64,000 nucleotides of DNA, from positions 1-64,000 of IMG/VR virus record IMGVR_UViG_3300037010_003311; one strand, given 5' to 3'. Every line of letters begins with the position of its first letter. Within the stretch, counting starts at the first letter, position 1. The translations under genes and the position numbers were made by a program. Below the pieces are notes generated by a model that did not search any database, was not told the origin of the DNA, and worked only from the letters and a program-made list of their open reading frames with translations. This document shows positions 1,774 through 64,000 of this stretch, piece after piece.

Positions 1774-2448
1774 ATGACACAATCAAATGAAATTAAAAAC
1801 GAGAACAACACAATTACTCCAAAGTATAAACTTGGAGCAGCAAAAGAGTTTAACGGAAAAACTCTTTTTAGAATTATCGCTCTTAGATCTTTCAGCAATG
1901 TAATTGCTGGAGATATTGGCGGCTGGATTGAAAGCGAAGCCAATTTATCCCATGACGGAAACGCATGGGTATTTGACGAAGCCATGGTATATGGTAATGC
2001 CAAAGTATTTGGCAATGCCGAATTATGGGGTAATGCCGAAGTATTCGGCAATGCTCGCGTATACAACTACGCGCGCATTGCCGATAATGCCATGGTATGG
2101 GACAATACCATGGTATATGATTATGCCTTGGTATTGGATGATGCCAAGGTATATGAAAATTCCCATGTATTTGGGAATGGTGTAGTGAGAGGTGACACCT
2201 CAATATTTGGTGACGCTATAGTCACCAAAGCGGCAGTGTCGCTTCCAACCGACGAACATATGATTGTCATCACTGACAATCATATATCGATTGGGGGGAA
2301 AAATTTCCCAATCGAGAATTGGAACGAAACTGATAAAGAAATAGCCAAAATAAATTTTGGCGCTGACAATTGGTGGAAAAAATGGAAACCAATTGCCTTT
2401 GGGATAATTGAGGCTTATCCCAACGGGGCCTTCGTAAAAAGAGGTTAA
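1774..2448 (+). CDS. capped hexapeptide-repeat (beta-helix) protein, dispersed copy
   Basis: N-cap KYKLG..TLFR..ALR.F..GDIGGWIE..NLSH.G.AW, V[YF][GD]NAx repeats, C-cap ITDN.I.IG...WWK.WKPI. Confidence 0.9.
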   Translation: MTQSNEIKNENNTITPKYKLGAAKEFNGKTLFRIIALRSFSNVIAGDIGGWIESEANLSHDGNAWVFDEAMVYGNAKVFGNAELWGNAEVFGNARVYNYARIADNAMVWDNTMVYDYALVLDDAKVYENSHVFGNGVVRGDTSIFGDAIVTKAAVSLPTDEHMIVITDNHISIGGKNFPIENWNETDKEIAKINFGADNWWKKWKPIAFGIIEAYPNGAFVKRG

Positions 2449-31427: not shown

Positions 31428-32453
31428 ATGACAACAGTTAAAATTAAAAATAAAGATAAAACAGTTGGGCCAAAATATAAACTAGGTGAGCCAAAAGATT
31501 TTAACGGAAGAACTCTGTTTAGAGTTATAGCATTAAGAGCTTTTAGCAATGTAAATATTGGCGATATCGGTGGCTGGATTGAAACCGAAGATAACTTGTC
31601 CCATAGTGGTGACGCTTGGGTAGGCGATGAGGCAAGAGTCTATGACGAGGCAAGAGTATATGATAATGCTCATGTATTTAATAATGCCTGCGTGTATGGT
31701 AAGGCTCAAGTTAGGGGCGATGCCAGAATATATGACCAAGCTACTATATTTGGTAAAGCTAATGTATTTGGTAAAGCCCAAATATTTGAGGATGCAAATA
31801 TATACGATGAGGCTAAGGTTTATAATAATGCAAGAGTGCGTGGTAATACCAAAGTATATAATAATGCTAAAATACATGATCGAGCTAGAGTAAGTGATAA
31901 TGCTAGAGTAAGTGATAACGCAATAATAGATGGATCGGCTCAGGTATATGGTAATGTTAGGATATATGGGAATTCTAGAATTTTTGGTAATGCCAAAGTA
32001 TATGATGATGCCTGCGTGTATGGTAAGGCTCAAGTTAGAGGTGAGGCCAGAATATATGACGAAGCTACTATATTTGGTAAAGCTAAGGTATTTGGTAAAG
32101 CTCAAATATATGAGGAAGCAAATATATATGATGATGCTCAAGTGTACGGTAATACTAAAATATCTGGTTATGGTGAAGTATATGATAATGCTCAGGTATT
32201 TGGTAATGGATTGATTAAGGGTAATACCCAAGTATATGGTGACGCCATAGTTACCAAAGCCGTTAATACAATATCCACTTCTAGATATGATATTACGATT
32301 ACCGACAATTATCTAAAAATCGGGAGTGAAAATCACCCAATCGATGATTGGGAAGCTTTTACAGACGAGCAGATAGCTGACATGGATACCGGAGCACTAG
32401 AGTGGTGGAACATTTGGAAGCCAAGCATATTCAGCATGATAAAAAAGTATTAA
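31428..32453 (+). CDS. capped hexapeptide-repeat protein
   Basis: N-cap, long repeat tract with an internal block duplication, C-cap. Confidence 0.9.
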   Translation: MTTVKIKNKDKTVGPKYKLGEPKDFNGRTLFRVIALRAFSNVNIGDIGGWIETEDNLSHSGDAWVGDEARVYDEARVYDNAHVFNNACVYGKAQVRGDARIYDQATIFGKANVFGKAQIFEDANIYDEAKVYNNARVRGNTKVYNNAKIHDRARVSDNARVSDNAIIDGSAQVYGNVRIYGNSRIFGNAKVYDDACVYGKAQVRGEARIYDEATIFGKAKVFGKAQIYEEANIYDDAQVYGNTKISGYGEVYDNAQVFGNGLIKGNTQVYGDAIVTKAVNTISTSRYDITITDNYLKIGSENHPIDDWEAFTDEQIADMDTGALEWWNIWKPSIFSMIKKY

Positions 32454-32555
32454 ATTATAATAATTTTAATTTATAATGTGACTGAGGGTTGAGGTTTAGA
32501 ATTCCATATTATATAACGATTCGCGAAGCTGAATCGGTAAAGAGAAAGGTAACTT

Positions 32556-32855
32556 ATGAAATACGTAATACTTGATTTTAATAACGGTAAAGTCTTCCCA
32601 GATAATCATTTATATCAAGAAGCTTTAAACTTTTGTAATTCTGATATGCAAACTATAACGATTGGGTCCGAATTATTTTTTCATCAGTTTAGACTGTTGG
32701 TTAAAACCAAAGTTATCAATAATGAAGATTATCAGTTTATTTTCAAAACTGATAATCACGAAATGTTATTAAATGTTAGCTCCGATGGTGCGTTATGTGA
32801 ATGGTATCCATCGGATTATAATGTATCATTTAATACAATTATCAAAATTATATAA
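32556..32855 (+). CDS. hypothetical protein inside the repeat-gene cluster
   Basis: ORF with RBS. Confidence 0.6.
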   Translation: MKYVILDFNNGKVFPDNHLYQEALNFCNSDMQTITIGSELFFHQFRLLVKTKVINNEDYQFIFKTDNHEMLLNVSSDGALCEWYPSDYNVSFNTIIKII

Positions 32856-32951
32856 CTGGAATATTATGACATTACAAAAAGAAATTAAAATCCTTTAGAA
32901 GATGTTCAATTACTGTATAAATAAAAAATAACTCAAAAAGAAGGAAATATT

Positions 32952-33785
32952 ATGACACAATCAAATGAAATTAAAAACGAGAATAAAGCAATTGCACCAA
33001 AATATAAACTTGGTGAAGCAAAAACGTTTAACGGGAAAACTCTTTTTAGAGTTGTAGCATTGAGAACATTTAGCAATGTTGCTGCTGGTGATATCGGTGG
33101 CTGGATTGAAATCGAAGCTAACTTGTCCCATAGTGGAGATGCTTGGGTTTATGACGAAGCTATGGTATATGATGGGGCAAGAGTTAGTGGTAATGCTATG
33201 GTATTGGATCATGCTATTGTATTTGGTAACTCGATGATATACGATAATGCCATGGTATTGGATCATGCTATTGTATTTGGTAACTCGATGGTATTTGATA
33301 ATGCCATGGTATTTGATAATGCTATGGTATTTGATTATGCTATGGTATTTGATAATGCCATGGTATTTGATTATGCTATGGCATATTGTAAAGCTAGGGT
33401 ATATGGTGATGCTCGGGTATTTGGTAATGCTGAAGTATATGGTGATGCTCGGGTATTTGGTAATGCTGAAGTATATGGTGATGCGGTTGTATATGGTAAC
33501 TCGATGGTATACTCCGGAGCTAAAGTATATGGTGGTGCTCAGGTGTATGGCGAAACTGAGATTTCAGATAGTGCTCAAGTATGGGGTAATGCAAAAATTT
33601 TTGGTAAAGCAAAAATTTCTGGGAACGCAAGAGTTTTTGATAAAGCCGAAGTTTTTGGTAATATTTGGGTTTATGGTGATACATTAGTTCATGATAACAC
33701 AAAAATTTATGATAATGCTAAAATTTCTTGTAAAACAATCATTTGGGGCAAAACACTTATTACTGAAACATACAAGGATAAGTAA
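32952..33785 (+). CDS. hexapeptide-repeat protein without C-cap
   Basis: N-cap and repeats; divergent end. Confidence 0.9.
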   Translation: MTQSNEIKNENKAIAPKYKLGEAKTFNGKTLFRVVALRTFSNVAAGDIGGWIEIEANLSHSGDAWVYDEAMVYDGARVSGNAMVLDHAIVFGNSMIYDNAMVLDHAIVFGNSMVFDNAMVFDNAMVFDYAMVFDNAMVFDYAMAYCKARVYGDARVFGNAEVYGDARVFGNAEVYGDAVVYGNSMVYSGAKVYGGAQVYGETEISDSAQVWGNAKIFGKAKISGNARVFDKAEVFGNIWVYGDTLVHDNTKIYDNAKISCKTIIWGKTLITETYKDK

Positions 33786-34489
33786 TGATAGAATTAAAAT
33801 ATAAACTAGGTGAATCAAAAGAGTTCGAAGGGAGAACTCTTTTTAGGGTCGTAGCACTGAGATCATTTAGCAATGTAACAGCCGGTGATATCGGTGGCTG
33901 GATTGAAATCGAAGATAATTTGTCACATAGTGGAGATGCTTGGGTCTATCGTGATGCTAAGGTATATGGGAATGCCCGAGTATTTGGTGATGCTCATATA
34001 AGTAATAATGCTCAGGTATTTGGTAATGCTCGAATAAATGATGATGCCTGGATAGGCAATAATGCTCAGATATATGGTAATGCTTGCGTGCATGGTAATG
34101 CTCAGGTATATGATAATGCTGAAGTATATGATAATGCCGAAGTATTTGATAATGCCGAAGTATTTGATAATGCCTGCGTATATGGTAATGTTCAGGTATT
34201 TGATAATGCTGAAGTATATGGTGATGCCCGGGTGGTTGATAATGGTGTAGTTGATAGTAATGCTCAAGTATGTGGCAATGCTTTGGTAACTAAAGCAGTT
34301 AATACAATAACCACCAATAAATATATTATCACGATTGCTGACAATTACATGAAAATCGGTTGTCGGAATCACCCAATCGATGATTGGGAAGCTTTTACAG
34401 ACGAGCAGATATCTGACATGGATACCGGAGCATTAGCTTGGTGGAAAGTTTGGAAGCCAATTATATTTACCATAATAAATGCTTATTAA
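33785..34489 (+). CDS. capped hexapeptide-repeat protein
   Basis: N-cap, repeats, C-cap ending WKPIIFTIINAY. Confidence 0.9.
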   Translation: MIELKYKLGESKEFEGRTLFRVVALRSFSNVTAGDIGGWIEIEDNLSHSGDAWVYRDAKVYGNARVFGDAHISNNAQVFGNARINDDAWIGNNAQIYGNACVHGNAQVYDNAEVYDNAEVFDNAEVFDNACVYGNVQVFDNAEVYGDARVVDNGVVDSNAQVCGNALVTKAVNTITTNKYIITIADNYMKIGCRNHPIDDWEAFTDEQISDMDTGALAWWKVWKPIIFTIINAY

Positions 34490-34516
34490 ATAAGCTAACT
34501 ACAAAAAGGAAAGATT

Positions 34517-35167
34517 ATGATACAATCAACTGAAATTAAAAACGAGAATAAAGCAATTGAACCAAAATATAAACTTGGAGGCACAAAAACATTTAACGGG
34601 AGAACTCTTTTTAGAGTTATAGCATTAAGATCTTTTAGCGATGTGATGGCTGGTGATATCGGTGGTTGGGTAGAAACTGAAGATAACCTAGCACAAGATG
34701 GTGACGCTTGGGTCTATGATGATGCTATGGTATATGATGGGGCAAGAGTTAGTGGTAATGCTGTGGTATTGGATCATGCTATTGTATTTGGTAACTCGAT
34801 GATATACGATAATGCCATGGTATTTGATAATGCCGTGGTATATGGTAATGCCATGGTATATGATTATGCTATGGCATATTGTAAAGCTAGGGTATATGGC
34901 AATGCTCGGGTATTTGGTAAGGGATTGGTTAAAGGTAAAGCCCAAGTATATGGTAACGCCATAGCTACCAAAGCAGTTAATACGATGCATACTGATGCTT
35001 ACAATATTACCATTATTGATAATTATATAACTATTGGGTTCGAAAATCACCCAATCGCTGATTGGGAAGCATTTACCGACGAGCAGATAGCTGACATGGA
35101 TACTGGAGCCCTAGCGTGGTGGAAAGTTTGGAAGCCAATTATATTTGCTATAATAAATGCTTATTAA
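34517..35167 (+). CDS. capped hexapeptide-repeat protein
   Basis: N-cap, repeats, C-cap. Confidence 0.9.
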   Translation: MIQSTEIKNENKAIEPKYKLGGTKTFNGRTLFRVIALRSFSDVMAGDIGGWVETEDNLAQDGDAWVYDDAMVYDGARVSGNAVVLDHAIVFGNSMIYDNAMVFDNAVVYGNAMVYDYAMAYCKARVYGNARVFGKGLVKGKAQVYGNAIATKAVNTMHTDAYNITIIDNYITIGFENHPIADWEAFTDEQIADMDTGALAWWKVWKPIIFAIINAY

Positions 35168-35194
35168 CTAAGCTAACTGCAAAAAGGAAATAAT

Positions 35195-35974
35195 ATGACA
35201 AAAGTAGATAATAAAGCAATTATACCAAAATATAAACTTGGTGTAGCAAAAGAGTTCGATGGGAGAACTCTTTTTAGAGTTGTAGCGTTAAGAGATTTCG
35301 GTGACATAAAAGCCGGTGATATCGGTGGCTGGATCGAAACTGAAACTAACTTATCTCATAGTGGTAACGCTTGGGTCTATGATGATGCCAAAGTACAAGA
35401 TAATGCAAGAGTGAAGGATAATGCAGTAATTTGGGATAATGTGGTTGTATATGATAACGCAATGGTATATGGTAATGCAGTAATTTGGGATAATGTGGTT
35501 GTATATGATAACGCAATGGTATATGGTAATGCAGTAATTTGGGATAATGTGGTTGTATATGATAACGCAATGGTATATGGTAATGCCCGGATATTGGATA
35601 ATGCCAAAGTATATGATAACGCAATGGTATATGATAATGCAAGAGTTAGTGATACCGCCCAGGTTTATGGTAATGCTAAAATATATGGTATGGTTGAAGC
35701 ATACGATAATGTTCGTATATTTGGTGACACATGGGTTACCGGTAATACTTAAGTATATGGTAACGCCATAGCTACCAAAGCAGTTAATACGATGCATACT
35801 GATGCTTACAATATTACCATTATTGATAATTATATAACGATTGGATTCGAAAATCACCCAATCGTTGATTGGGAAACATTTACAGATGATGAAATATCTA
35901 AAATGGATACCGGAGCACTAGCGTGGTGGAAAGTTTGGAAGCCAATTATATTTGCTATAATAAATGCGTATTAA
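35195..35974 (+). pseudogene. capped hexapeptide-repeat gene with a single in-frame TAA (35750-35752)
   Basis: GGT AAT ACT TAA GTA TAT here versus GGT AAT ACT CAA GTA TAT in the paralog at 36427-36444; frame continues to an intact C-cap. Confidence 0.85.
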
Positions 35975-35991
35975 ATAAATAAGGATAAAAA

Positions 35992-37584
35992 ATGGTAGGA
36001 AAAAAATATAAACTTGGAGAATCAAAAAAGTCCCAAGGAAGAACTCTTTTTAGAGTTGTAGCGTTAAGAGATTTCGGTGACGTAAAAGCAGGTGATATCG
36101 GTGGTTGGATAGAAACTGAAACTAACTTATCTCATAGTGGTGATTCTTGGGTCTATGATGAGGCCAGAGTTAGTGGTGATACTTGGGTCTATGGTAATGC
36201 CAAAATATCCAATAATGCACAGATATTCGGTAATGCCTGCATATATGGTAATACCAAAGTAGGGGATGAAGCTCAGGTATTTGGTAATGCCATCGTATAT
36301 GGTAATGCTTTGATATATGGTTCTACTCAGGTATTTGGTAATGTTGAAATATATGAGAATGCCCAAGTATTTGGTATGGCTAAAGCATACGATAATGTTC
36401 GTATATTTGGTTATGCATGGATTACCGGTAATACTCAAGTATATGGTAACACCATAGTTACCAAAGCGGTTAATACAATATACACTGGTGAGTATGATAT
36501 TATCATTACTGACAACTATATAAAGATTTGGTGGGAAAATCACCCAATCGACGTTTGGGAAGCATTTACCGACGAGCAGATAGCTGACATGGATACCGGA
36601 GCGCTAGCGTGGTGGAAAGTTTGGAAGCCAATTATATTTGATATAATACAAAAAGGAAATAATATGACATCACAAAAAGAAATTAAAAACTTCTGGGAAA
36701 AGATGCTTAATTACCGTATAAATAAAAATAACTCCAAAAAAGAAGGAAATAATATGATGCAATCAAATGAAATTAAAAACGAGAATAAAGCAATTGTACC
36801 AAAATATAAACTTGGTGAAGCAAAAACCTTTAATGTAAGAACTCTTTTTAGAGTTGAAGCTCTGAGATCATTTGGCAATGTGTCTACCGGTGATATCGGT
36901 GGCTGGATTGAAAACGAAGATAATTTGTCTCATAGTGGAGATGCTTGGGTCTATGACGAAGCTATGGTATATGGTAATGCTCGAGTGAGTAATGACGCAA
37001 TAGTGAGGGATAATGCCTGCATATATGGTAATACCAAAGTAGGGGATGAAGCTCAGGTATTTGGTAATGCCATCGTATATGGTAATGCTTGTATAAGTGA
37101 TAATGCTCAGGTATATGGTAATGCTCGTATAAGTGATGACGCCCAAGTATACGATACAGCTCATGTATTCGATAACGCATATATAATCGATAATGCTTGG
37201 ATAGGTAATAATGCAAGAGTATGTGGCAATGCGCGTATAACTGATGATTCGCGAGTATACGATAACGCATTGATTAGTGGTCATTCCTTGATTTCTGATA
37301 GGGCTTTGATATATGGCAATGCCCAGGTATTTGATAATGGCTTGGTTAAGGGTAATACCCATGTATGGGGTAACGCCGAAGTTACCAAAGCAGTTATTAC
37401 GATACATACCGATGCTTACAATATTACCATTACTGATAATTATATAACTATTGGGTTCGAAAATCACCCAATCGCTGATTGGGAAACATTTACTGATGAT
37501 GAAATATCCAAAATGGATGCAGGAGCGTTAGATTGGTGGCGAGTCTGGAAGCCAATTATATTTGCTATAATAAATGCTTATTAA
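35992..37584 (+). CDS. in-frame fusion of two capped hexapeptide-repeat genes
   Basis: two complete N-cap/repeat/C-cap units; former intergenic DNA with its RBS is read through; internal start near 36754. Confidence 0.85.
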   Translation: MVGKKYKLGESKKSQGRTLFRVVALRDFGDVKAGDIGGWIETETNLSHSGDSWVYDEARVSGDTWVYGNAKISNNAQIFGNACIYGNTKVGDEAQVFGNAIVYGNALIYGSTQVFGNVEIYENAQVFGMAKAYDNVRIFGYAWITGNTQVYGNTIVTKAVNTIYTGEYDIIITDNYIKIWWENHPIDVWEAFTDEQIADMDTGALAWWKVWKPIIFDIIQKGNNMTSQKEIKNFWEKMLNYRINKNNSKKEGNNMMQSNEIKNENKAIVPKYKLGEAKTFNVRTLFRVEALRSFGNVSTGDIGGWIENEDNLSHSGDAWVYDEAMVYGNARVSNDAIVRDNACIYGNTKVGDEAQVFGNAIVYGNACISDNAQVYGNARISDDAQVYDTAHVFDNAYIIDNAWIGNNARVCGNARITDDSRVYDNALISGHSLISDRALIYGNAQVFDNGLVKGNTHVWGNAEVTKAVITIHTDAYNITITDNYITIGFENHPIADWETFTDDEISKMDAGALDWWRVWKPIIFAIINAY

Positions 37585-37610
37585 ATAGCTAACCGCAAAA
37601 AGGAAATAAT

Positions 37611-38360
37611 ATGATGCAATCAAATGAAATTAAAAACGAGAATAAAGCAATGGTAACTCCAAAATATAAGCTTGGTGAGTCAAAAGAGGTCTTAGGGAGA
37701 ACTCTTTTTAGAGTTGTAGCGTTAAGAGATTTCGGTGACGTAAAAGCAGGTGATATCGGTGGTTGGGTAGAAACTGAAGATAACCTAGCACAAGATGGTG
37801 GAGCTTGGGTAGAAACTGAAGATAACCTAGCACAAGATGGTGGAGCTTGGGTCTATGATGAAGCTATGGTATATGATGGGGCAAGAGTCTATGATGACGC
37901 AAGAATATTTGATAAAGCGATTGTATGTGGTAACTCGCTGGTATATGGTAACTCGCTGGTGCGCGAGTATGCTATGGTATATGATAATGCTGAGGTAGCT
38001 GGTAAGGCCGGGATAGCTGGTAATGCTAAAGTATATGATAACGCGTTAGTTAGTGGCTATTCCTTGGTCTCTGGTAATGCTTCGATATATGGTGCAGCCC
38101 GGATATTTGATAATGGGGTAGTTGATAGTATCGCCCAAGTATGCGGTAACGCAGTAGTTACCAAAGCAGTTAATACCATACACACTGATAAATATATTAT
38201 CACGATTACTGATAATTATCTAAAAATTGGATGTCAGAATCACCCGATCGACGTTTGGGAAGCATTTACCGACGAGCAGATAGCTGACATGGAGGTAGGA
38301 GCATTAGATTGGTGGCGAGTCTGGAAGCCAATTATATTTACCATAATAAATGCTTATTAA
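37611..38360 (+). CDS. capped hexapeptide-repeat protein
   Basis: has a 42-bp tandem duplication encoding WVETEDNLAQDGGA twice. Confidence 0.9.
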   Translation: MMQSNEIKNENKAMVTPKYKLGESKEVLGRTLFRVVALRDFGDVKAGDIGGWVETEDNLAQDGGAWVETEDNLAQDGGAWVYDEAMVYDGARVYDDARIFDKAIVCGNSLVYGNSLVREYAMVYDNAEVAGKAGIAGNAKVYDNALVSGYSLVSGNASIYGAARIFDNGVVDSIAQVCGNAVVTKAVNTIHTDKYIITITDNYLKIGCQNHPIDVWEAFTDEQIADMEVGALDWWRVWKPIIFTIINAY

Positions 38361-38387
38361 CTAAGCTAACTATGAAAAGGAAAGATT

Positions 38388-38963
38388 ATGACAAAAGTAG
38401 ATAATAAAGAAATTACACCAAAATATAAACTTGGTGAAGCAAAAGAGTTCGATGGGAGAACTCTTTTTAGGGTCGTAGCGTTAAGAGATTTCGGTGACGT
38501 AAAAGCCGGTGATATCGGTGGTTGGGTAGAAAATGAAACTAACTTGTTTCATAGTGGTGACGCTTGGGTCTATGATGAGGCTAGAGTTAGTGGTGATGCT
38601 TGGGTCTATGATGAGGCTAGAGTTAGTGGTGATGCGCGGGCATATGGTAATGCCTGCATATATGGTAATACCAAAGTAGGGGATGAAGCTCAGGTATTTG
38701 GTAATGCCATCGTATATGGTAATGCTTGTATAAGTGATAATGCTCAGGTATATGGTAATGCTCGTATAGGTAATAATGCGCGGGTATATGGTAATGCTTG
38801 CGTGCATGGTAATGCTCAGGTATATGGTAATGCTGAAGTATATGGTAATGCTGAAGTATATGGTAATGCTGAAGTATATGGTAATGCTGAAGTATATGGC
38901 AGCGCAAAAATATCTAACAATATTTGGATATTTGATAATGCCCGTATATATGGTAAGGCCTAA
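38388..38963 (+). CDS. truncated hexapeptide-repeat protein (decaying copy)
   Basis: TAA at a Q position of the repeat; degenerate repeat sequence continues to about 39045; no C-cap. Confidence 0.75.
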   Translation: MTKVDNKEITPKYKLGEAKEFDGRTLFRVVALRDFGDVKAGDIGGWVENETNLFHSGDAWVYDEARVSGDAWVYDEARVSGDARAYGNACIYGNTKVGDEAQVFGNAIVYGNACISDNAQVYGNARIGNNARVYGNACVHGNAQVYGNAEVYGNAEVYGNAEVYGNAEVYGSAKISNNIWIFDNARIYGKA

Positions 38964-39077
38964 ATATTTGATAACGCTCAAGCATACGATAATGCATTGA
39001 TTAGGGGGTTAGTCCACGATCTCTGGTAATGATTTGATATACGCGGATTAAATAGCTAAATACAAAAAGGAAAGATT

Positions 39078-39857
39078 ATGACAAAAGCAGATAATAAAGG
39101 TGTGACACCAAAATATAAACTTGGTGAAGCAAAAACCTTTAATGGAAGAACTCTTTTTAGAGTTGTAGCATTGAGAACATTTAGCAATGTTGCTGCTGGT
39201 GATATCGGTGGCTGGATTGAAATCGAAGCTAACTTGTCCCATAGTGGAGATGCTTGGGTCTATGATGAAGCTATGGTATATGGTAAGGCCAGAGTTGGTA
39301 ATGACGCAATAGTGAGGGATAATGCCAGAATGAGTGATAATGCTCATGTATATGGTAATGCGTTGATAGGTGGTAATGCGGTTGTATATGGTAACGCAAT
39401 AGTATACGCTAGAGCGCAAGTATATGATAATGCACAAATATCTGGTGATACCCATGTGTGCGATAATGCTAAGGTATTTAATAATGCTAAGGTATATGGT
39501 AATGCTCAAATTTCTGGTTATGCTAAGGTATTTAATAATGCTAAGGTATATGGTAATGCCCATATCCATGGTAATGCTAATGTTGGGGATAATGCTAAAG
39601 TATATGGTAATGGTTTGGTTGGCGGATATACTAGGATATATGTTGATACGATAGTTACCAAAGCAGTTAATACCATATTCACTGATAAATATGAGGTTAC
39701 AATTTCTGACAATTATATAAAAATCGATTGCGAGAATCACTCACTATTCGATTGGGAAAATTTTACTGATAATCAGATATCCAAAATGGATACTGGAGCA
39801 TTAGAATGGTGGAAAGTTTGGAAGCCAATTATATTTGCTATAATAAATGCAGATTAA
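39078..39857 (+). CDS. capped hexapeptide-repeat protein
   Basis: N-cap, repeats, C-cap. Confidence 0.9.
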   Translation: MTKADNKGVTPKYKLGEAKTFNGRTLFRVVALRTFSNVAAGDIGGWIEIEANLSHSGDAWVYDEAMVYGKARVGNDAIVRDNARMSDNAHVYGNALIGGNAVVYGNAIVYARAQVYDNAQISGDTHVCDNAKVFNNAKVYGNAQISGYAKVFNNAKVYGNAHIHGNANVGDNAKVYGNGLVGGYTRIYVDTIVTKAVNTIFTDKYEVTISDNYIKIDCENHSLFDWENFTDNQISKMDTGALEWWKVWKPIIFAIINAD

Positions 39858-40215: not shown

Positions 40216-40527
40216 ATGCATGTACATGATTGGATAAACGAAAGAATGTATGGGAAATGCCCGGATGAAGAAAAATATGCTGTAGCTTTTTTACATATAA
40301 AGGCTACTACAACAGCAGTAAGTACTTGGGTTATAGAACCCATAATGAAACAACATAAACTTTTTTGTACGTACAAAGGAAGCAAATATAGAGTCACTGG
40401 ATGCAGCCGTATGGGTGATATATGGTTAGTAAAAAATTATAATAAAGATAATGGATACGATCTTAGAGTAGACGTTGAAGAGTGTACGGATTGGTCTGAA
40501 AAATTGGATAAAGAAAAAGGAGAATGA
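40216..40527 (+). CDS. phage hypothetical protein
   Basis: YRVTGCSRMGDIWL..GYDLRV. Confidence 0.7.
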   Translation: MHVHDWINERMYGKCPDEEKYAVAFLHIKATTTAVSTWVIEPIMKQHKLFCTYKGSKYRVTGCSRMGDIWLVKNYNKDNGYDLRVDVEECTDWSEKLDKEKGE

Positions 40528-40528
40528 T

Positions 40529-40882
40529 ATGAAGATATCAATGGATAAAAAATATACATGTTGCGGAGAGCCAATACGTATATTATGTATAGATGGAAAT
40601 GACAGTCTCTATCCGGTCATTGGGCTGAGAGATGATGGAACTATACTTAAATTCAGAGAAGATGGGAAATGTTCGCCAGAGTATAACCTCGTGGAGGTTT
40701 GGGAACCAGTAGTAGAAGAATGGTGCCTATTTACCGATGAAACATTAGTTGGGGCATGGTTGTTGCAATTTCTTGATAATGAAGATGGTCGTTTTTATGC
40801 CCTGGGGGTATCGGATAGTTTTGATAAATGTTATAAATTTACGGGAACCATCCCTAAACACTTAAAAGGAAATTTAAAATGA
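40529..40882 (+). CDS. tandem family 2 member (MKISMDKKYT...LPEHL type)
   Basis: shares RILC.D, NLVEVWEP..EWC.F and CYKF.G with neighbours. Confidence 0.85.
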   Translation: MKISMDKKYTCCGEPIRILCIDGNDSLYPVIGLRDDGTILKFREDGKCSPEYNLVEVWEPVVEEWCLFTDETLVGAWLLQFLDNEDGRFYALGVSDSFDKCYKFTGTIPKHLKGNLK

Positions 40883-41238
40883 AAATAGAAATGGGTAAGA
40901 AATATACGAGTAATGGTGACTCTGTTCGAATATTATGTACCGATAGACCTAACGATAATGGGTACACAGTTGTTGGATTATTTGAAAATGGCATGATAGG
41001 CTATTTTACAGAAGACGGGGAAAGTACAACTACTGATCGTCGTAACTTAGTTGAGGTCTGGGAACCGCAACGTGGCGAGTGGTGCCTATTTACAGATTCA
41101 TCATTTAATGGAGCAATGCTGATGCAATTTCTTGTTTGTACAATTTATGGTAGATTTCATGCGATGGGGTCGTACCGCAGTTTTGATCACTGTTATAAAT
41201 TTGATGGAATACTCCCAGAACACTTAAAAGGAGAATGA
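40879..41238 (+). CDS. tandem family 2 member
   Basis: same motif set. Confidence 0.85.
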   Translation: MKIEMGKKYTSNGDSVRILCTDRPNDNGYTVVGLFENGMIGYFTEDGESTTTDRRNLVEVWEPQRGEWCLFTDSSFNGAMLMQFLVCTIYGRFHAMGSYRSFDHCYKFDGILPEHLKGE

Positions 41239-41239
41239 T

Positions 41240-41956
41240 ATGAAGATATCAATGGATAAAAAGTATACAAGTAATGGGCAAGCAGTAAGAATTTTGTGCA
41301 TAGACCGAAAGAATGATTTGTCAGTCGTAGGAATGCTTACGAATAGTAAAATATGTTATTTTTCGGATAACGGTCATAGTCTCGCCGGAGAATGTTATAA
41401 CTTAGTAGAAGCATGGGAACCGCAACGTGGAGAGTGGTGCCTGTTTTATAATATTCTGCAGCCTCACATCATTTTAGATCAATTTGTAGAAATGACTGAT
41501 CAAGGAGAATTCAAAACTCCCGATAATTTAAGTTGGAAATATTGTTATAAATTTACTGGTATTCTACCAGAACATTTACAAGTGCAGAAAAAATATATAG
41601 AACTAACGGTAGAAATGGATAAAAAATATACGTCTGATGGAAGGCCAGTTCGCATATTATGTAATGATAGACCAAGTGGTGATTCTGTAGTAGGACTTTA
41701 TGAAAATGGCGATTTATGTTATTTTACTGGTAAAGGTTATAGTCTCGCCGGAGAATGTTATAACTTAGTAGAAGCATGGGAACCGCAACGTGGAGAGTGG
41801 TGTTTATTTTGTAATGTTCTGAAACCACACAACACTATTTTAGATCAATTTGTAGAAATGACCGAACTCGGAGAATTCCAAACTCCTGATAATTTAAGTT
41901 GGAAATATTGTTATAAATTTACTGGTATTCTACCAGAACACTTAAAAGGAGAATGA
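41240..41956 (+). CDS. tandem family 2 member with two fused units
   Basis: unit repeated twice, second halves near-identical. Confidence 0.85.
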   Translation: MKISMDKKYTSNGQAVRILCIDRKNDLSVVGMLTNSKICYFSDNGHSLAGECYNLVEAWEPQRGEWCLFYNILQPHIILDQFVEMTDQGEFKTPDNLSWKYCYKFTGILPEHLQVQKKYIELTVEMDKKYTSDGRPVRILCNDRPSGDSVVGLYENGDLCYFTGKGYSLAGECYNLVEAWEPQRGEWCLFCNVLKPHNTILDQFVEMTELGEFQTPDNLSWKYCYKFTGILPEHLKGE

Positions 41957-41957
41957 T

Positions 41958-42314
41958 ATGAAGATATCAATGGATAAAAAGTATACAAGTAATGGACAAG
42001 CAGTAAGAATTTTGTGTATAGATGGGTATAAAGAAGATTACCCAGTCGTCGCGATGTATTTAGATGGTGATATTAGATATTTTACTGAAGATGGAGAAAG
42101 TGCAACTGGTGCTCATCGTAACTTAGTTGAGGTATGGGAACCGCAAGTTGGTGAGTGGTGTTGGTTCTGGGATAGTAATGATCAAAAACATGCATCTTTA
42201 TATGAATTCGTAAAAATGGATGATGTTGGAAAATTTACCTCCACTGCTGGTTGTCATTGGAAACATTGTGCCCAATTTGATGGAACTCTCCCAGAACACT
42301 TAAACGGAGAATGA
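41958..42314 (+). CDS. tandem family 2 member
   Basis: same motif set. Confidence 0.85.
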   Translation: MKISMDKKYTSNGQAVRILCIDGYKEDYPVVAMYLDGDIRYFTEDGESATGAHRNLVEVWEPQVGEWCWFWDSNDQKHASLYEFVKMDDVGKFTSTAGCHWKHCAQFDGTLPEHLNGE

Positions 42315-42315
42315 T

Positions 42316-42834
42316 ATGAAGATATCAATGGGTAAAAAGTATACAAGTAATGGAAAGAACTTACGTGTAGTTTGTATAGATAGAGAAAATACATTTGGGT
42401 ATAAAGTTGTTGGGGTATTTGATGATGGAGATATAAAATGCTTTAGATCAAATGGTGATAGCGCGCTTGACTCAAAATATGACTTACAAGAAGTATGGGA
42501 ACCAACTGAAAACGAGTGGTGTTGGTTCTGGGATTGTAATGATTCACAACATATAATTTTATCTAAATTTAAGGAAAAGAATGCTGATGGAATGTTCGGG
42601 TCGGTCGATGGATATTTCTGGATTTATTGTGCTAAATTTACTGGAGAACTACCAGAACATTTACAAGAGAAGACTATAGATTTTAAAAAAACTTTTGTAG
42701 CGAGGGAAGCCAGATGTCAGGATTGTACATATTTGCTTGAATTAGATGGTGAGGGGTATTGTAATTCGGTTAATGATATAGTTAAGAATATAATCGACTG
42801 TCCTTATGGCCGCAGCGAAATTCATAATTGTTAA
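42316..42834 (+). CDS. tandem family 2 member with Cys-rich C-terminal extension
   Basis: unit plus CxxC...C...C tail. Confidence 0.85.
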   Translation: MKISMGKKYTSNGKNLRVVCIDRENTFGYKVVGVFDDGDIKCFRSNGDSALDSKYDLQEVWEPTENEWCWFWDCNDSQHIILSKFKEKNADGMFGSVDGYFWIYCAKFTGELPEHLQEKTIDFKKTFVAREARCQDCTYLLELDGEGYCNSVNDIVKNIIDCPYGRSEIHNC

Positions 42835-48877: not shown

Positions 48878-49022
48878 AACGTGCTCTAATAAATTGATTG
48901 ATGATTCAATTTGGCAAAAATATATTAATGGTGAAACCGATCTAAAGGATAAAAAATTTTTCAATAATTTTTATTCTAAACTTAAAAAAAGGATATCAAA
49001 TGATATTAAAATTGAAAAATGA
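48849..49022 (+). CDS. small CxxC ORF between the split-intein halves (possible homing endonuclease remnant)
   Basis: MKFQNPPLCRTCSNKL; overlaps both flanking ORFs in a third frame. Confidence 0.45.
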   Translation: MKFQNPPLCRTCSNKLIDDSIWQKYINGETDLKDKKFFNNFYSKLKKRISNDIKIEK

Positions 49023-50004
49023 TTTTATAGTTGAAGATTTAGGTATTCGAGAAGAATGGGTTTATGATATAGAAGTTAAAGATAATCATAATTTCTTTGC
49101 AAATAATATCTTAGTACACAATTCCGCATATTTGCTATTCGATTTACCATTCAATAAATTTGATGATATCCGGCAACTGGTTGATTATATACAGCAGTTG
49201 TCGACTAAAATTGATACAGAATACAATAATGCTTTAAATTATTATGGTTCAATGTTTGCGGGGTTAAATCCTGAATTCAATATTATGAAATTTAAATCAG
49301 AAGTTGTAGCGTATCAAGGCTTCTTCAACACCAAAAAGTTTTATGCATTGAGTAAAGCTTGGGACGAAGGAGCTTTCTTTGATACGCCAGAAATTAAAAA
49401 GACCGGTGGCCAAATTAAGAAAGCAGACGTTACTAAGATATCGGAACAGCTTTTATCCTTAGTCTATAAAATACTTGTTTTACCATCAGAAACTAAAGAT
49501 CTTGAGTCATTATATAAAAAGATCTTTATTGAGACTAAAAACCGTATTAAAATGCAACTAAAGCATGATATAGATAATCTTGATTTTAAAAGTTTCGGTG
49601 TACCAAAAAAATGGAGTTTTAAAGCTACAAAAGATATGCAGTGGGTAACCGGTGCAAGATTGTATAATCAAATAGTGGAGGATCTTCACCGCCCTGGAGA
49701 TTCAATGTTAACTCTTCCAATTAAAGGGAATTTTAACATTCTTCAAAACTATGATGAACAATTATCTTTAAAAAATAAAGATTTAACTTATCTACTTAAA
49801 GCTGATGATTATAATGATATATCTACTTTAAGTATTCCACCGAATATGAATTCTGAACAAGTACAAAAACTATCAGCGGCATTTGAAAAATATTCAATTC
49901 GAGTAGATTTTGATCAGGTAATGTTATTTAATATAGATATGAAATTGGAAGTATTTGAAAAACTATTTCCCCCAGAAATTAAATTATTGGTAAAGGGAGA
50001 TTGA
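49000..50004 (+). CDS. split-intein C part (41 aa) fused to family B DNA polymerase C-terminal palm/thumb
   Basis: own AAAGGA RBS; VYDIEV..NHNFFANNILVHN|SAY; downstream FKSE and KKFY PolB-like motifs. Confidence 0.88.
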   Translation: MILKLKNDFIVEDLGIREEWVYDIEVKDNHNFFANNILVHNSAYLLFDLPFNKFDDIRQLVDYIQQLSTKIDTEYNNALNYYGSMFAGLNPEFNIMKFKSEVVAYQGFFNTKKFYALSKAWDEGAFFDTPEIKKTGGQIKKADVTKISEQLLSLVYKILVLPSETKDLESLYKKIFIETKNRIKMQLKHDIDNLDFKSFGVPKKWSFKATKDMQWVTGARLYNQIVEDLHRPGDSMLTLPIKGNFNILQNYDEQLSLKNKDLTYLLKADDYNDISTLSIPPNMNSEQVQKLSAAFEKYSIRVDFDQVMLFNIDMKLEVFEKLFPPEIKLLVKGD

Positions 50005-55433: not shown

Positions 55434-55865
55434 TTGATAGATTTAAAAATGAGTGAAACAGAAGTATCTCCACCAGCAATTGCGGAAGTAAATGCCTCTA
55501 CCGATTTAGATACTGGTGGGAAATATACAAAGATTATAAATCTTACGAATCATAAACTAACGGAAATTCTTAGTGGGATCCAAATTGATTTCTCTGAGAG
55601 TGGCGTAGCTAGAGTTGATTGTAGAGATGAAATCATTTATCGTGATCCATCTGGTTATACAATTTCTCGTACAAAATATGTACATATTGTTGGCATCGAT
55701 TTGGATAATATTAATCCAAATCATTTATACATAGTTTCAGCTGTGGTATTGAATGCCATTCGTGAACGTGGATTACAATTTGATAATATTGTGGCACCAG
55801 CTAAAATCATTAGGGATAGTGATAACAACGTTATTGCGGCTAGGGGGTTCCGAGTAAATGGTTAA
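55434..55865 (+). CDS. phage hypothetical protein
   Basis: NLT.H, SGVARV, YIVS, RD..N.I...GF motifs. Confidence 0.65.
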   Translation: MIDLKMSETEVSPPAIAEVNASTDLDTGGKYTKIINLTNHKLTEILSGIQIDFSESGVARVDCRDEIIYRDPSGYTISRTKYVHIVGIDLDNINPNHLYIVSAVVLNAIRERGLQFDNIVAPAKIIRDSDNNVIAARGFRVNG

Positions 55866-61699: not shown

Positions 61700-62629
61700 A
61701 TGGTAGAAAAAAAATATAAACTTGGTGAGTCAAAAGGGTTCCAAGGAAGAACTCTTTTTAGAGTTGTAGCAATAGTTGGATTCGCTGATGTAAACATTGG
61801 TGAAATCGGTGGTTGGGTAGAGAAAGAAAATAACCTAGCTCACGATGGTGATGCCTGGATCTATGGTGACGCTATGGTATATGGGGATGCTCGAGTTAGT
61901 GGTGATGCTATAGTATATGGTGATGCCCGAGTTAGTGGTGAGGCCCGAGTATATGGTAAGGCTCACGTTAGTGGTGAGGCTCGCGTTAGTGGTGAGGCTC
62001 ACGTTAGGGATAATGCTGAAGTATATGGTAATGCTCAAGTATACGGTTATGCTATGGTATATGGTAATGCTGAAGCATATCGTTTTGCCAAAGTATATGA
62101 TTATACCGAAGTGTATGATAATGCAGAAGTATATGGTAATGCTGAAGTATATTGTGATGCTCGAGTTAGTGGTAATGCTAAGGTGCATGGTAATGCGATG
62201 GTATATGGTAATACTCGAGTTAGTGGTAATGTTATGATACATGGTAATGCGATGGTATATGGTAATTCTGAGGTATATGATAGAGCTCAAGTATATGGGG
62301 AGGCCCAAGTGTATGATAATGCCAAAGTGTATGGTGATACTTATATATATGATAAAGCCATTATATACGATGATGCTGAAGTGTATGATAATGCTAAAGT
62401 ATATGATAATGCCCAAGTGTATGGTTTTGCTGAAGTATATGATAATGCTAAAGTATATGATAGGGCTCAGGTATCTGGTATTGCTGAAGTATATGGTAGG
62501 GCTCAGGTATCTGGTATTGCTGAAGTATATGATAGGGCTCAGGTATATGGTATGGCTCAGGTATATGGTTGGGCCAAAGTATATAACGATACTCATGTAT
62601 CTGGTTATGATGAAGTCTATAGTGTATGA
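61700..62629 (+). CDS. hexapeptide-repeat protein, second cluster, no C-cap
   Basis: N-cap plus repeats ending NDTHVSGYDEVYSV. Confidence 0.9.
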   Translation: MVEKKYKLGESKGFQGRTLFRVVAIVGFADVNIGEIGGWVEKENNLAHDGDAWIYGDAMVYGDARVSGDAIVYGDARVSGEARVYGKAHVSGEARVSGEAHVRDNAEVYGNAQVYGYAMVYGNAEAYRFAKVYDYTEVYDNAEVYGNAEVYCDARVSGNAKVHGNAMVYGNTRVSGNVMIHGNAMVYGNSEVYDRAQVYGEAQVYDNAKVYGDTYIYDKAIIYDDAEVYDNAKVYDNAQVYGFAEVYDNAKVYDRAQVSGIAEVYGRAQVSGIAEVYDRAQVYGMAQVYGWAKVYNDTHVSGYDEVYSV

Positions 62630-62714
62630 TATCAAAGTAATACCATCATATAAACCAAAGTTGCCAATACCGGACCGAGGACATACTACTTCAGAACTTG
62701 AAGCTAAGTTATGA
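62626..62714 (+). pseudogene. frameshifted and internally deleted copy of 63358-63630
   Basis: shares SYKPKLPI and TTS.LEAK; its ATG is out of frame. Confidence 0.55.
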
Positions 62715-62729
62715 AGATTGAAACGAAAG

Positions 62730-62769
62730 AACTTACCGGATAACCAGGTAAGTTTCCCGGTCGCTAAAA
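62730..62769 (+). repeat. hairpin element B, copy 2
   Basis: AACTTACCGG-ATAAC-CAGGTAAGTT then CCGGTCGCTAAAA. Confidence 0.75.
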
Positions 62770-62827: not shown

Positions 62828-63361
62828 ATGGTGGAAAAAAAATATAAACTTGGTGAGTCAGAAGAGTTTCCATCTGGAACTCTTTTTAGAGTTATAGCAT
62901 TAAAAGATTTTAACGATGTAACTGCTGGTGAAATCGGTGGTTGGATCGAAAAAGAAGATAACCTAGCGCAAGATGGTGACGCTTGGGTCTATGGTGACGC
63001 TATGGTATATGGTGATGCTCGAGTTAGTGATGATGCTCAGGTATATGGTAATGCCCGAGTTAGTGGTGAGGCTCGAGTATATGATAAGGCTCACGTTAAG
63101 GATAATGCTGAAGTATATGGTAATGCTCAAGTATATGGTTATGCTATGGTATATGGTAATGCTGAAGCATATCGTTTTGCCAAAGTATATGATTATGCCG
63201 AAGTATATGATTATGCCGAAGTGTATGATAATGCTCAAGTGTATGATTATGCTGAAGTATATGATAATGCTGAAGTATATGGTATGGCTCAGGTATACGG
63301 TTGGGCCAAAGTATATAACGATACTCATGTATCTGGTTATGATGAAGTATATAGTGTATGA
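62828..63361 (+). CDS. hexapeptide-repeat protein, shorter paralog of 61700-62629
   Basis: same C-terminal 25 aa, fewer repeats. Confidence 0.9.
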   Translation: MVEKKYKLGESEEFPSGTLFRVIALKDFNDVTAGEIGGWIEKEDNLAQDGDAWVYGDAMVYGDARVSDDAQVYGNARVSGEARVYDKAHVKDNAEVYGNAQVYGYAMVYGNAEAYRFAKVYDYAEVYDYAEVYDNAQVYDYAEVYDNAEVYGMAQVYGWAKVYNDTHVSGYDEVYSV

Positions 63362-63707: not shown

Positions 63708-64000
63708 ATGGTAGGAAAAAAATATAAACTTGGGGAGTCAGAAGAGTTCTTAGGAAGAACTATTTTTAGAATTATAGCACTAAGAACATTTAATGATGTA
63801 TCTATCGGAGACATTGGTGGATGGGTCGAAAGTGAAAATAACTTAGATCATAATGGTGGTGCCTGGATTTATGGTAATGCTATGGTATATGGTGATACTC
63901 GAGTTAGTTGTAATGCTATGGTATATGGTAATGCTATGGTATATGATAATGCTCAGGTATATGGTGATGCTCAAGTATACGGGGATGCCCAAGTATATGG
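63708..64000 (+). CDS. hexapeptide-repeat protein, partial (runs off the window)
   Basis: MVGKKYKLGE..TIFRIIALR.F..GDIGGWVE then VYG[DN]A repeats. Confidence 0.88.
   Translation, partial: MVGKKYKLGESEEFLGRTIFRIIALRTFNDVSIGDIGGWVESENNLDHNGGAWIYGNAMVYGDTRVSCNAMVYGNAMVYDNAQVYGDAQVYGDAQVY

What the first reader, a model, noticed from the sequence alone, without database searches (positions are those of the whole stretch)
31428..39857. Expanded, recombining repertoire of capped hexapeptide beta-helix genes
Seen: ten gene units in 8.4 kb, plus one at 1774 and three at 61.7-64 kb (about 14 in the window). All share a conserved N-cap of about 50 aa, a V-[YF]-[GD]-[ND]-A-x tract that differs in length and sequence in every copy, and an optional Trp-rich C-cap. 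Single genes of this type occur in many phages, but this copy number is exceptional to my knowledge. Inference: a gene accordion producing variable-length, variable-surface beta-solenoids, comparable to an antibody-like or effector repertoire (anti-defence decoys or host-factor binders). There are no signal peptides and the genes sit in a non-structural region. This is the best candidate for an undescribed system, but the function is unknown.
Basis: partly seen in the sequence, partly recalled or inferred. Interest (0 to 1): 0.88.

Follow-up and report, generated by a model that had tools for sequence, protein, structure and literature searches.

The report
Fourteen-copy phage beta-helix gene family
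A large T4-like phage from microbial mats carries 14 diverged, recombined copies of a widespread but uncharacterised phage rod protein (a capped beta-helix related to YdcK), about two to three times the most seen in any other phage checked, and what the protein does is still unknown.

Summary
A profile of the N-cap finds exactly 14 units in the 226.7 kb genome, all on the + strand: one at 1774, ten at 31428-39857 and three at 61700-64295. Nine also carry the Trp-rich C-cap. The repeat tracts are loop-free hexads (V-Y-G/D-N/D-A-x), 14 to 42 per unit.

The family is already catalogued (Pfam PF18836 YdcK solenoid, PHROG 5070/7964, PDB 2f9c/2pig). No function is known for it.

The copy number is exceptional. 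The maximum is 5 among 50,697 phage records and 5-6 in the IMG/VR contigs examined.

The copies are old (dS about 0.7-0.8) and their caps are under purifying selection (dN/dS about 0.2). The N-caps and C-caps have conflicting histories (p about 1e-8), which shows recombination between paralogs. Some units are decaying: two carry premature stops, one ORF fuses two units, and some have lost the C-cap. Contigs sharing the module carry 1-3 copies.

This is a birth-and-death multigene family, not a recent accordion, an assembly artefact or a DGR.

New lead: the C-cap is mainly a C-terminal module of phage pentapeptide-repeat proteins (102 of 124 sampled). That suggests non-enzymatic rod-shaped binders. 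The function remains an inference.

The parts
1774..2448 (+). Unit A0: dispersed copy with N-cap, 14 hexads and a diverged C-cap. Its upstream spacer is the same type as that of B2 and B6b.
   Evidence: N-cap HMM 98 bits and C-cap HMM 99 bits; tract; spacer
31428..32453 (+). Unit B1: N-cap, 35 hexads (with an internal duplication of about 46 aa) and C-cap.
   Evidence: PF18836 75 bits
32556..32855 (+). Unrelated 99-aa gene embedded in the array. In contig L042 an 88%-identical copy lies after three tandem solenoid genes.
   Evidence: phrog_12026
32952..33785 (+). Unit B2: N-cap and about 35 hexads, no C-cap. Its end overlaps the start codon of B3.
33785..34489 (+). Unit B3: intact, 19 hexads. 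This is the protein that was modelled.
34517..35167 (+). Unit B4: intact, 14 hexads.
35195..35974 (+). Unit B5: 22 hexads, including a 54-nt repeat of 4.1 copies. It is broken by an in-frame TAA at 35750-35752, where the paralogs have CAA. The C-cap continues in the same frame.
   Evidence: the stop is present in run X2 contig 35584-35780
35992..37584 (+). One ORF fusing two units. B6a has 17 hexads and a C-cap that lacks its last residues and its stop codon. B6b starts at 36754 and has 24 hexads and a C-cap. Between them, at about 36655-36753, is a remnant of a unit's 5' end.
37611..38360 (+). Unit B7: intact, 17 hexads, with a perfect 42-nt tandem duplication at 37763-37852 at the end of the N-cap.
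38388..39030 (+). Unit B8: N-cap and at least 20 hexads. A TAA stop at 38961-38963 is followed by solenoid-like remains. Most of the C-cap is deleted.
39078..39857 (+). Unit B9: intact, 22 hexads, C-cap.
61700..62629 (+). Unit C1: 42 hexads, no C-cap, ends in ...EVYSV. A degenerate remnant of a downstream gene follows it, up to about 62720.
62828..63361 (+). Unit C2: 20 hexads, no C-cap. It is the most acidic unit (pI 4.2).
63708..64000 (+). Unit C3: it continues to 64295 in the genome, beyond the window. It has about 23-26 hexads and no C-cap.

Best explanation
This is a birth-and-death multigene family of YdcK-type capped left-handed beta-helix proteins. It lies in the accessory (early-type, non-structural) region of a distant T4-like jumbo phage.

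Shown:
- There are 14 units, each with a conserved N-cap and a loop-free hexad rod of 14-42 hexads. Nine have a C-terminal Trp-rich domain.
- Tract length changes by slippage or unequal exchange, mostly in steps of 18, 36 or 54 nt.
- Whole N- and C-terminal modules have been exchanged between paralogs.
- Nonsense changes and deletions truncate or fuse some units.
- The caps are under purifying selection, and the variation sits mostly at outward-facing hexad positions.
- Array size differs between contigs that carry the same module.

Inferred:
- The products are non-enzymatic, cytoplasmic rod-shaped binding proteins made early in infection. Each rod presents a different surface and length, so together they bind or block a range of host factors, most likely host defence or DNA-handling proteins.
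- The shared C-terminal domain is the constant part, acting either as a dimerisation module or as a common docking module. In most other phages this domain sits on pentapeptide-repeat solenoids.
For: - Copy census.
- Family identity: PF18836 at 43-97 bits against a cut-off of 30; PDB YdcK 2f9c at E = 3e-22 including the N-cap; Foldseek best hit YdcK at E = 1e-8; AF2 model pLDDT 80 with both caps above 90; ESM Atlas model pLDDT 0.92, with nearest clusters that are mostly viral.
- Loop-free 6n+1 tracts and per-position entropy: position 6 has 3.4 bits, against 1.0 and 1.2 bits at the inward positions 1 and 5.
- Recent intragenic duplications.
- Caps: dN/dS 0.21-0.22 and dS 0.67-0.81.
- Recombination: Mantel r = -0.23 between the N-cap and C-cap identity matrices; triplet site tests give p = 2e-8.
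- Decay: TAA in place of CAA in B5; fusion scar in B6.
- Exceptional number.
- Variable arrays in contigs sharing the module.
- C-cap on pentapeptide-repeat proteins: 102 of 124 sampled cluster representatives, seen directly in L030, L033 and L101.
- Early or replication-gene neighbourhoods in other phages and here (topoisomerase II, ligase, DNA polymerase, rIIB).
- No conserved catalytic-type residue in the rod: the invariant rod columns in alignment A1 are Ala, and Val where nearly invariant.
- All units are acidic, pI 4.2-6.3.
Against: - No experiment or expression data exist. No RNA run could be listed.
- No partner or target is known for any member, including YdcK.
- The position-wise dN/dS in the rod (0.2-2.3) rests on hand-picked colinear blocks and few synonymous sites, so positive selection is not shown.
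- Three to five of the 14 units are damaged. Part of the array may therefore be dispensable.
- The oligomeric state could not be modelled.
- Short-read contigs do not prove the full order of the array.
Confidence: 0.6

Rival explanations
1. The rods are DNA-mimicking decoys of graded length. They would be analogous to the pentapeptide-repeat proteins Qnr and MfpA, and would occupy DNA-binding clefts of host nucleases, restriction or defence systems, or topoisomerases. The C-cap would pair two rods tail to tail.
For: - The same C-cap is attached mainly to pentapeptide-repeat solenoids in phages, and both solenoid types occur within 4 kb in L101.
- Pentapeptide-repeat proteins are described as DNA-mimicking solenoids that dimerise through C-terminal helices (PMC10886550).
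- All units are acidic, with net charge -1 to -11 per 100 aa.
- Acidic residues concentrate at hexad positions 3 and 4.
Against: - The net charge is modest in several units (B1 and B9 about -1 per 100 aa).
- The fold is triangular and left-handed, not the quadrilateral fold of Qnr and MfpA.
- No binding data exist.
- A text search of a catalogue paper covering 268 anti-defence proteins found no mention of a solenoid, pentapeptide or hexapeptide member.
Confidence: 0.15
2. They are hexapeptide-repeat acyl- or acetyltransferases (trimeric LpxA-like enzymes) that modify a host or phage molecule.
For: Pfam Hexapep PF00132 is above its cut-off in four of the nine array ORFs (42-47 bits against 27), and three more are at or just above it. 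There are weak NCBIfam hits to LpxD, LpxA and NeuD. Sources annotate relatives as 'acetyltransferase-like isoleucine patch'.
Against: - The tracts are uninterrupted hexads with no substrate-binding loops.
- The number of turns varies threefold, and the phase modulo 3 is not kept.
- Alignment A1 shows no invariant His, Asp or Ser in the rod.
- All enzyme-family scores are far below their curated cut-offs.
- The closest structure, YdcK, has no shown activity.
Confidence: 0.07
3. They are bactofilin-like polymerising scaffolds that organise something in the infected cell.
For: Pfam Bactofilin PF04519 is just above its cut-off in two units (34.0 and 29.7 bits against 27.9). Sources name some relatives 'polymer-forming cytoskeletal protein'.
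Against: - Most units score below the cut-off.
- The hits overlap the generic repeat.
- Both ends of the rod are closed by dedicated cap domains with confident models, which argues against end-to-end polymerisation.
- The sequence and fold relative is YdcK, not a bactofilin.
Confidence: 0.08
4. They are virion parts (a beta-helical fibre or spike), or the array is functionless repeat-driven junk or an assembly artefact.
For: - There are weak PHROG hits to baseplate, tail-fibre and structural families (E = 1e-5 to 5e-4).
- Several units are broken.
- The Logan contigs in the region are fragmented, with odd joints.
Against: - The genes sit among early and replication genes, here and in other phages.
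- The products are small, with no fibre domains.
- Cap dN/dS of about 0.2 at dS of about 0.7-0.8 shows long-term constraint.
- The units are 72-87% identical, which short reads can resolve.
- Identical pieces and junctions occur in three runs.
Confidence: 0.06

Closest known systems
YdcK family (Pfam PF18836 B_solenoid_ydck; NCBIfam NF040481; PDB 2f9c/2pig, Salmonella YdcK, structural genomics)
   Same: The N-terminal cap and the first turns align (phmmer E = 3e-22, residues 18-129 of the query to 25-135 of YdcK). The repeat type is the same, and YdcK is the best Foldseek hit.
   Different: The phage units are shorter and have perfectly regular tracts. They carry a different C-terminal domain or none. 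They score 85-143 bits against the 350-bit equivalog cut-off. YdcK itself has no known function and is a single-copy gene.
PHROG families 5070 and 7964 (phage proteins of unknown function; for example Streptococcus phage Sfi19 orf229 and Lactobacillus phage LfeInf gp098-105)
   Same: Full-length matches at E = 1e-49 to 1e-102. The position is similar, among early and replication genes.
   Different: These phages carry one copy, at most five (LfeInf); here there are 14. No published function was found.
Phage pentapeptide-repeat proteins with the same Trp-rich C-terminal domain (for example Rheinheimera phage Barba proteins; L030, L033, L101)
   Same: The C-terminal domain of about 65 aa is the same (IGC..H...W..F.D..I..MD..AL.WWK.WKP). 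It is also at the C-terminus of a small solenoid protein in a phage accessory region.
   Different: The rod is a right-handed pentapeptide solenoid, not a left-handed hexapeptide one. This genome has no pentapeptide-repeat protein.
Expanded repeat-protein multigene families of large DNA viruses, and poxvirus gene accordions (from general knowledge)
   Same: Tandem paralogues in an accessory region, with copy number that differs between relatives.
   Different: The copies here are old and mosaic (dS about 0.7-0.8), not recent near-identical amplicons. The fold is different, and the virus is a phage.

Membership tests
YdcK-type beta-solenoid (Pfam PF18836) | Score above Pfam's gathering cut-off (30 bits) | tested here: met
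   42.9-97.3 bits in all nine ORFs of the array
YdcK-type beta-solenoid (Pfam PF18836) | N-terminal cap homologous to that of YdcK, and a YdcK-like fold | tested here: met
   phmmer against PDB 2f9c gives E = 2.8e-22 and covers the N-cap. The best Foldseek PDB hit is 2f9c at E = 1.2e-8.
YdcK equivalog (NCBIfam NF040481) | Whole-protein score of at least 350 bits | tested here: not met
   85-143 bits: a homologue, not an equivalog
Hexapeptide-repeat acyltransferases (LpxA-like) | Hexapeptide left-handed beta-helix | tested here: met
   Hexad consensus V-Y-G/D-N/D-A-x over 327 hexads. PF00132 is clearly above its cut-off in four ORFs and at or just above it in three more.
Hexapeptide-repeat acyltransferases (LpxA-like) | Loops or insertions and conserved catalytic residues forming an active site; curated enzyme-family score | tested here: not met
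   The tracts are loop-free. The invariant rod columns are structural Ala, with Val where nearly invariant. Scores against LpxA, LpxD, NeuD and GlmU are 12-50 bits against cut-offs of 150-700.
Hexapeptide-repeat acyltransferases (LpxA-like) | Trimer with active sites at the interfaces | not testable with these tools
   Only monomer prediction was available
Bactofilin (PF04519) | Domain score above the cut-off, and open ends that allow polymerisation | tested here: inconclusive
   Two units are just above the 27.9-bit cut-off and the others are below it. Both ends are capped in the model.
Pentapeptide-repeat proteins (Qnr/MfpA type) | Pentapeptide repeats (PF00805) | tested here: not met
   No PF00805 match anywhere in the genome. 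Only the C-terminal domain is shared.
Diversity-generating retroelement targets | Reverse transcriptase in the genome | tested here: not met
   No PF00078 match in the 226.7 kb held. The record is estimated to be 81% complete.
Recent gene accordion (poxvirus type) | Near-identical tandem amplicons | tested here: not met
   Units are 72-87% identical at the DNA level, and only one 191-nt stretch reaches 93%. dS is about 0.7-0.8.

The most novel reading that the evidence does not exclude
Phages may use small capped beta-solenoid rods of two unrelated folds (pentapeptide and YdcK-type hexapeptide), joined to one common Trp-rich C-terminal domain, as a general class of intracellular decoys. These could be DNA-shaped or protein-binding. 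This phage would have turned the hexapeptide version into a recombining repertoire of rods that differ in length and surface, to cover many host targets.
Probability: 0.15. Interest if true: 0.8.

Novelty: new variant of a known kind. Interest (0 to 1): 0.55.

Why it matters
The protein family is large: at least 2,454 proteins at E <= 1e-10 among the 8,000 candidates scored. Its nearest Atlas clusters are mostly viral. It is present in phages of many hosts, yet it has no known function.

A genome in which this family is the largest paralogue group, is kept under selection and has been shuffled gives unusually rich comparative material. The 14 natural variants show which parts are constant (the caps) and which are free to vary (rod length and outward-facing positions). 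The link between the C-cap and phage pentapeptide-repeat proteins gives a concrete and testable starting point for assigning a function to two common groups of phage 'hypothetical proteins'.

Tried and rejected
- Megablast of the array against phage records found nothing.
- The single-sequence structure prediction was unusable, with pLDDT 45.
- PADLOC gave no hits.
- Literature searches for YdcK, LfeInf, hexapeptide or beta-helix paralogues, pentapeptide anti-defence, polyvalent proteins and beta-solenoid DNA mimics found no functional study of this family.
- The sigma-70 promoter scan showed no enrichment.
- The T4 late-promoter motif TATAAATA is not enriched in the window, 21 matches against 24 expected. 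It lies upstream of B2 and B6b only.
- Searching viral and metagenome contigs with the embedded 99-aa gene found nothing.
- A tree of the N-caps, including copies from other contigs, was unresolved with only 50 columns. I could not tell in-lineage expansion from ancient paralogy.
- The joints reported by read laying have short sides (18-44 letters, most under 30). I did not take them as evidence of structural polymorphism.
- The DGR reading was rejected because no reverse transcriptase is present.
- The long antisense and off-frame ORFs over the tracts are by-products of the repeat, not genes.

Full report
**Setting**

The window is the first 64 kb of a 226,657-bp IMG/VR virus record, estimated to be 81% complete. 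GC content is about 32%. The large ORFs around the finding match phage families for ATP-dependent DNA ligase, both topoisomerase II subunits, DNA polymerase, a homing endonuclease and rIIB. The closest cultured relatives of the topoisomerase are T4-like phages, at only about 34% identity. A Gp23-type capsid match is weak. This is therefore a distant T4-like jumbo phage, and the finding lies in its early-type accessory region. Public runs that hold the sequence come from microbial-mat and sediment metagenomes.

**Checking the observation**

I built an HMM from the 50-residue N-cap (KYKLG...GDIGGW.E.E.NL...G.AW[VI]) and searched the six-frame translation of the whole genome.
- It finds 14 full copies, all on the + strand: one at 1822, ten between 31473 and 39111, and three at 61712-63720. 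There are none in the other 160 kb.
- One partial extra match is an internal duplication in one unit.
- A C-cap HMM finds nine copies.

The ten units at 31428-39857 lie in nine ORFs, and the last unit ends at 64295, outside the window.

An all-against-all comparison of the genome's ORFs shows this is the largest paralogue family in the genome. The next largest are seven homing-endonuclease-like genes and five ORFs of a 119-aa family.

**Anatomy**

The repeat is a strict hexad, V/I-Y/F-G/D-N/D-A-x, over 327 hexads.
- Positions 1 and 5 are nearly fixed (entropy 1.0 and 1.2 bits).
- Position 6 is the most variable (3.4 bits).
- Position 2 is Tyr or Phe in 224 of 327 hexads.

Every tract that ends in a C-cap is exactly 6n+1 residues long with no inserted loop. 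These tracts hold 14, 35, 19, 14, 22, 17, 24, 17 and 22 hexads. The C-cap-less units have about 20 to 42. The number of hexads modulo 3 is not conserved, so the two caps are not held in a fixed rotational relation.

With roughly 4.8 A rise per 18-residue turn (general knowledge of left-handed beta-helices), the rods would span about 22 to 67 A.

The products are acidic, pI 4.2-6.3. They have no hydrophobic N-terminus or transmembrane stretch.

Between most units there is a conserved spacer of about 27 nt with a ribosome-binding site. A second spacer type is shared by the dispersed copy at 1774 and by two units of the array.

**What the family is**

- Pfam PF18836 (YdcK beta-solenoid repeat) is above its cut-off in all nine ORFs. 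Hexapep, Bactofilin and other beta-helix families give weaker, overlapping hits.
- PHROGs 5070 and 7964, both of unknown function, match full-length at E down to 1e-102.
- The NCBIfam 'YdcK family' model matches at 85-143 bits, well below its 350-bit equivalog cut-off. Enzyme families score far below their cut-offs.
- Against the PDB, the only strong sequence match is YdcK of Salmonella (2f9c/2pig, a structural-genomics entry of unknown function), at E = 3e-22, and the alignment includes the N-cap.
- An AlphaFold model built from a 32-sequence alignment (A1) has pLDDT 80 overall. Both caps are above 90. The middle of the rod is poorly placed, probably because of register ambiguity.
- The best PDB fold matches are again YdcK (E = 1e-8), followed by generic left-handed beta-helices.
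- The ESM Atlas holds a confident model of the same protein (pLDDT 0.92). Its nearest clusters are mostly viral 'hypothetical proteins'.
- The family is large, with at least 2,454 proteins at E <= 1e-10 among the 8,000 candidates scored. It carries only generic names.
- I found no paper that assigns it a function.

**Is the copy number exceptional?**

Yes, within what I could survey.
- tblastn of the N-cap against 50,697 phage records finds 66 records and 79 places. The maximum is 5 (Lactobacillus phage LfeInf), then 4 (Bacillus phage KLEB27-3). Nearly all other records listed have 1.
- In IMG/VR, an exact scan for DNA encoding GDIGGW[IV]E finds 56 stretches with at most 2 matches each. This genome alone has 12 such sites and is left out of that result.
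- HMM counts per fetched locus are 44 with one copy, 8 with two, 1 with three and 1 with five.
- The largest arrays seen elsewhere are six in tandem on a 21.7-kb fragment, five on a complete 94-kb contig and five on a complete 312-kb contig.

**Evolutionary state**

The units are 72-87% identical in DNA. Only the first 191 nt of B5 and B8 reach 93%.

In the caps, Nei-Gojobori estimates give dN/dS of 0.21 (N-cap, 91 pairs) and 0.22 (C-cap, 28 pairs), with dS of 0.81 and 0.67. The copies are old and constrained. They are not neutral and not a recent amplification.

Inside the rods, on colinear blocks, dN/dS is 0.34 and 0.20 at the inward positions 1 and 5. At positions 2, 3, 4 and 6 it is 0.72, 2.3, 1.4 and 0.55. 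Choosing the blocks by similarity and the small number of synonymous sites make this suggestive only.

Length change is ongoing:
- a perfect 42-nt duplication at 37763-37852;
- a 36-nt repeat of 2.3 copies at 97% identity;
- a 54-nt repeat of 4.1 copies at 92% identity.

**Recombination**

The identity matrices of the N-caps and C-caps of the same eight units are uncorrelated (Mantel r = -0.23), and every unit has a different nearest neighbour at its two ends.

Site-wise triplet tests are decisive:
- B5 shares 24 sites only with B6a against 4 only with B4 in the N-cap, but 2 against 21 in the C-cap (p = 2e-8).
- B6b behaves the same way with B9 and B5 (p = 2e-8).
- Two further triplets give p = 0.003-0.007.

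The two ends of the genes therefore have different histories. No reverse transcriptase is present, so this is not a diversity-generating retroelement.

**Decay**

- B5 has TAA where its paralogues have CAA, with the C-cap still in frame downstream.
- B8 has a premature TAA and has lost most of its C-cap.
- B6 is two units fused after loss of the first unit's last codons and stop. The remnant of a further unit's ribosome-binding site and first codons lies between them.
- B2 ends in a short divergent tail that overlaps the start of B3.
- C1 is followed by a degenerate remnant of the small gene that follows C2.

This is the pattern of a birth-and-death family.

**Reality of the assembly**

Logan contigs of three runs from different samples and studies match unique parts of the array without a single difference. 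They include pieces across the B3/B4 and B8/B9 junctions and across the B5 stop codon. A fourth run holds a diverged variant, with a piece across the B5/B6 junction. The contigs are short (150-440 bp), so the full order of the units rests on the original assembly. The reported joints have short sides, and I do not rely on them.

**Other contigs that share the module**

- Contig L042 has three tandem solenoid genes followed by a gene 88% identical to the 99-aa gene that sits between B1 and B2 here. It also carries members of the 119-aa family.
- L039 has six copies of the 119-aa family followed by one solenoid gene.
- L101 has one solenoid gene followed by three 119-aa genes, the same order as in the window. 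It also has a pentapeptide-repeat protein with the C-cap 2.7 kb away.

Array size therefore varies from 1 to 10 between contigs that share this module, and the solenoid genes and the 119-aa family travel together.

**The C-cap**

I searched the 66-residue C-cap against 1.84 billion cluster representatives. It finds 1,495 clusters at E <= 0.001, almost always at the C-terminus of proteins of 120-270 aa. Of 124 of the best, 102 carry pentapeptide repeats and only 9 carry the YdcK solenoid. Examples were read directly in L030 and L033, next to a primase-helicase gene. In L012, six tandem YdcK-type genes occupy the equivalent place next to pentapeptide-repeat genes. Other relatives replace the C-cap with DUF7666/DUF5758.

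The 'optional C-cap' is thus an independent domain that evolution has attached to two unrelated kinds of solenoid rod. Pentapeptide-repeat proteins such as Qnr and MfpA are described as DNA-mimicking solenoids that dimerise through C-terminal helices (PMC10886550). That is the basis of the functional inference and of the DNA-mimic rival. It is an analogy, not a test.

**Conclusion**

The description is secure. This is a 14-member, old, selected and recombined multigene family of YdcK-type capped beta-helix proteins. It is partly decaying and is the largest such family found in any phage I could compare.

The function is not known. The evidence argues against an enzyme: there are no loops, no conserved catalytic-type residues, and the number of turns varies freely. 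It argues against a virion part (genomic context, small size) and against end-to-end polymers (capped ends). It favours non-enzymatic, cytoplasmic rods that bind host factors, with the caps constant and the rod length and surface variable.

I put about 0.85 on the structural and evolutionary account. I put about 0.25-0.3 on the binder or decoy function, of which about 0.15 is for the DNA-mimic version.

Noticed in passing
window 40475-42834 (ORFs 40475-40882, 40879-41238, 41240-41956, 41958-42314, 42316-42834): A second tandem paralogue family lies directly downstream of the array. It consists of units of about 119 aa (motif ...KKYTS.G..VRILC.DR...NLVE.WEPQRGEWCLF), six units in five ORFs. It has no Pfam or PHROG match. 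It co-occurs with the solenoid genes, in variable numbers, in contigs L039, L042 and L101.
   Followed up: partly
L030:9581-10234, L033:9644-10198, L101:5230-5859 (- strand): In other phages the Trp-rich C-cap is mostly the C-terminal domain of small pentapeptide-repeat proteins (102 of 124 sampled). It has no Pfam model of its own.
   Followed up: yes
window 49000-50004 and 50001-51089: Two adjacent ORFs match different parts of a phage DNA polymerase family (phrog_262). The first matches profile positions 581-793 and the second matches 102-350. The order is therefore reversed relative to a normal polymerase gene, or these are two separate polymerase-related proteins.
   Followed up: no
window 55865-57418, plus six more places in the genome (86035, 120525, 135121, 146294, 147603, 182522): Seven paralogous ORFs related to a homing or HNH endonuclease make up the second-largest paralogue family of the genome.
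   Followed up: no
window 31533-32231 (-), 61835-62794 (-), and other long off-frame or antisense ORFs over the tracts: Long open frames on the opposite strand and in other frames of the repeat tracts, up to 319 aa, form their own 'families'. They are a by-product of the 18-nt periodic sequence and not evidence of genes.
   Followed up: partly
window 63358-63630 and 62640-62720: A 90-aa Cys-containing ORF follows unit C2, and a degenerate remnant of the same gene follows C1. The duplicated unit in the third cluster was therefore a solenoid gene together with this small gene.
   Followed up: no
window 32916-32923 and 36717-36724: The T4 late-promoter-like octamer TATAAATA lies about 30 nt upstream of B2 and B6b. 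The motif is not enriched in the window (21 found, 24 expected), so this may be chance.
   Followed up: partly
Vibrio phage records MG592579, MG592419, MG592511 and others: In the deposited annotation of Vibrio breoganii phages, several 'CRISPR_spacer' features lie on the homologue of this gene. Whoever annotated those records marked spacer matches there.
   Followed up: no
genome 224595-226621 (- strand) and 196301-200094 (- strand), outside the window: There are two further small tandem paralogue families, of four and three ORFs. This phage tends to keep tandem duplicates.
   Followed up: no
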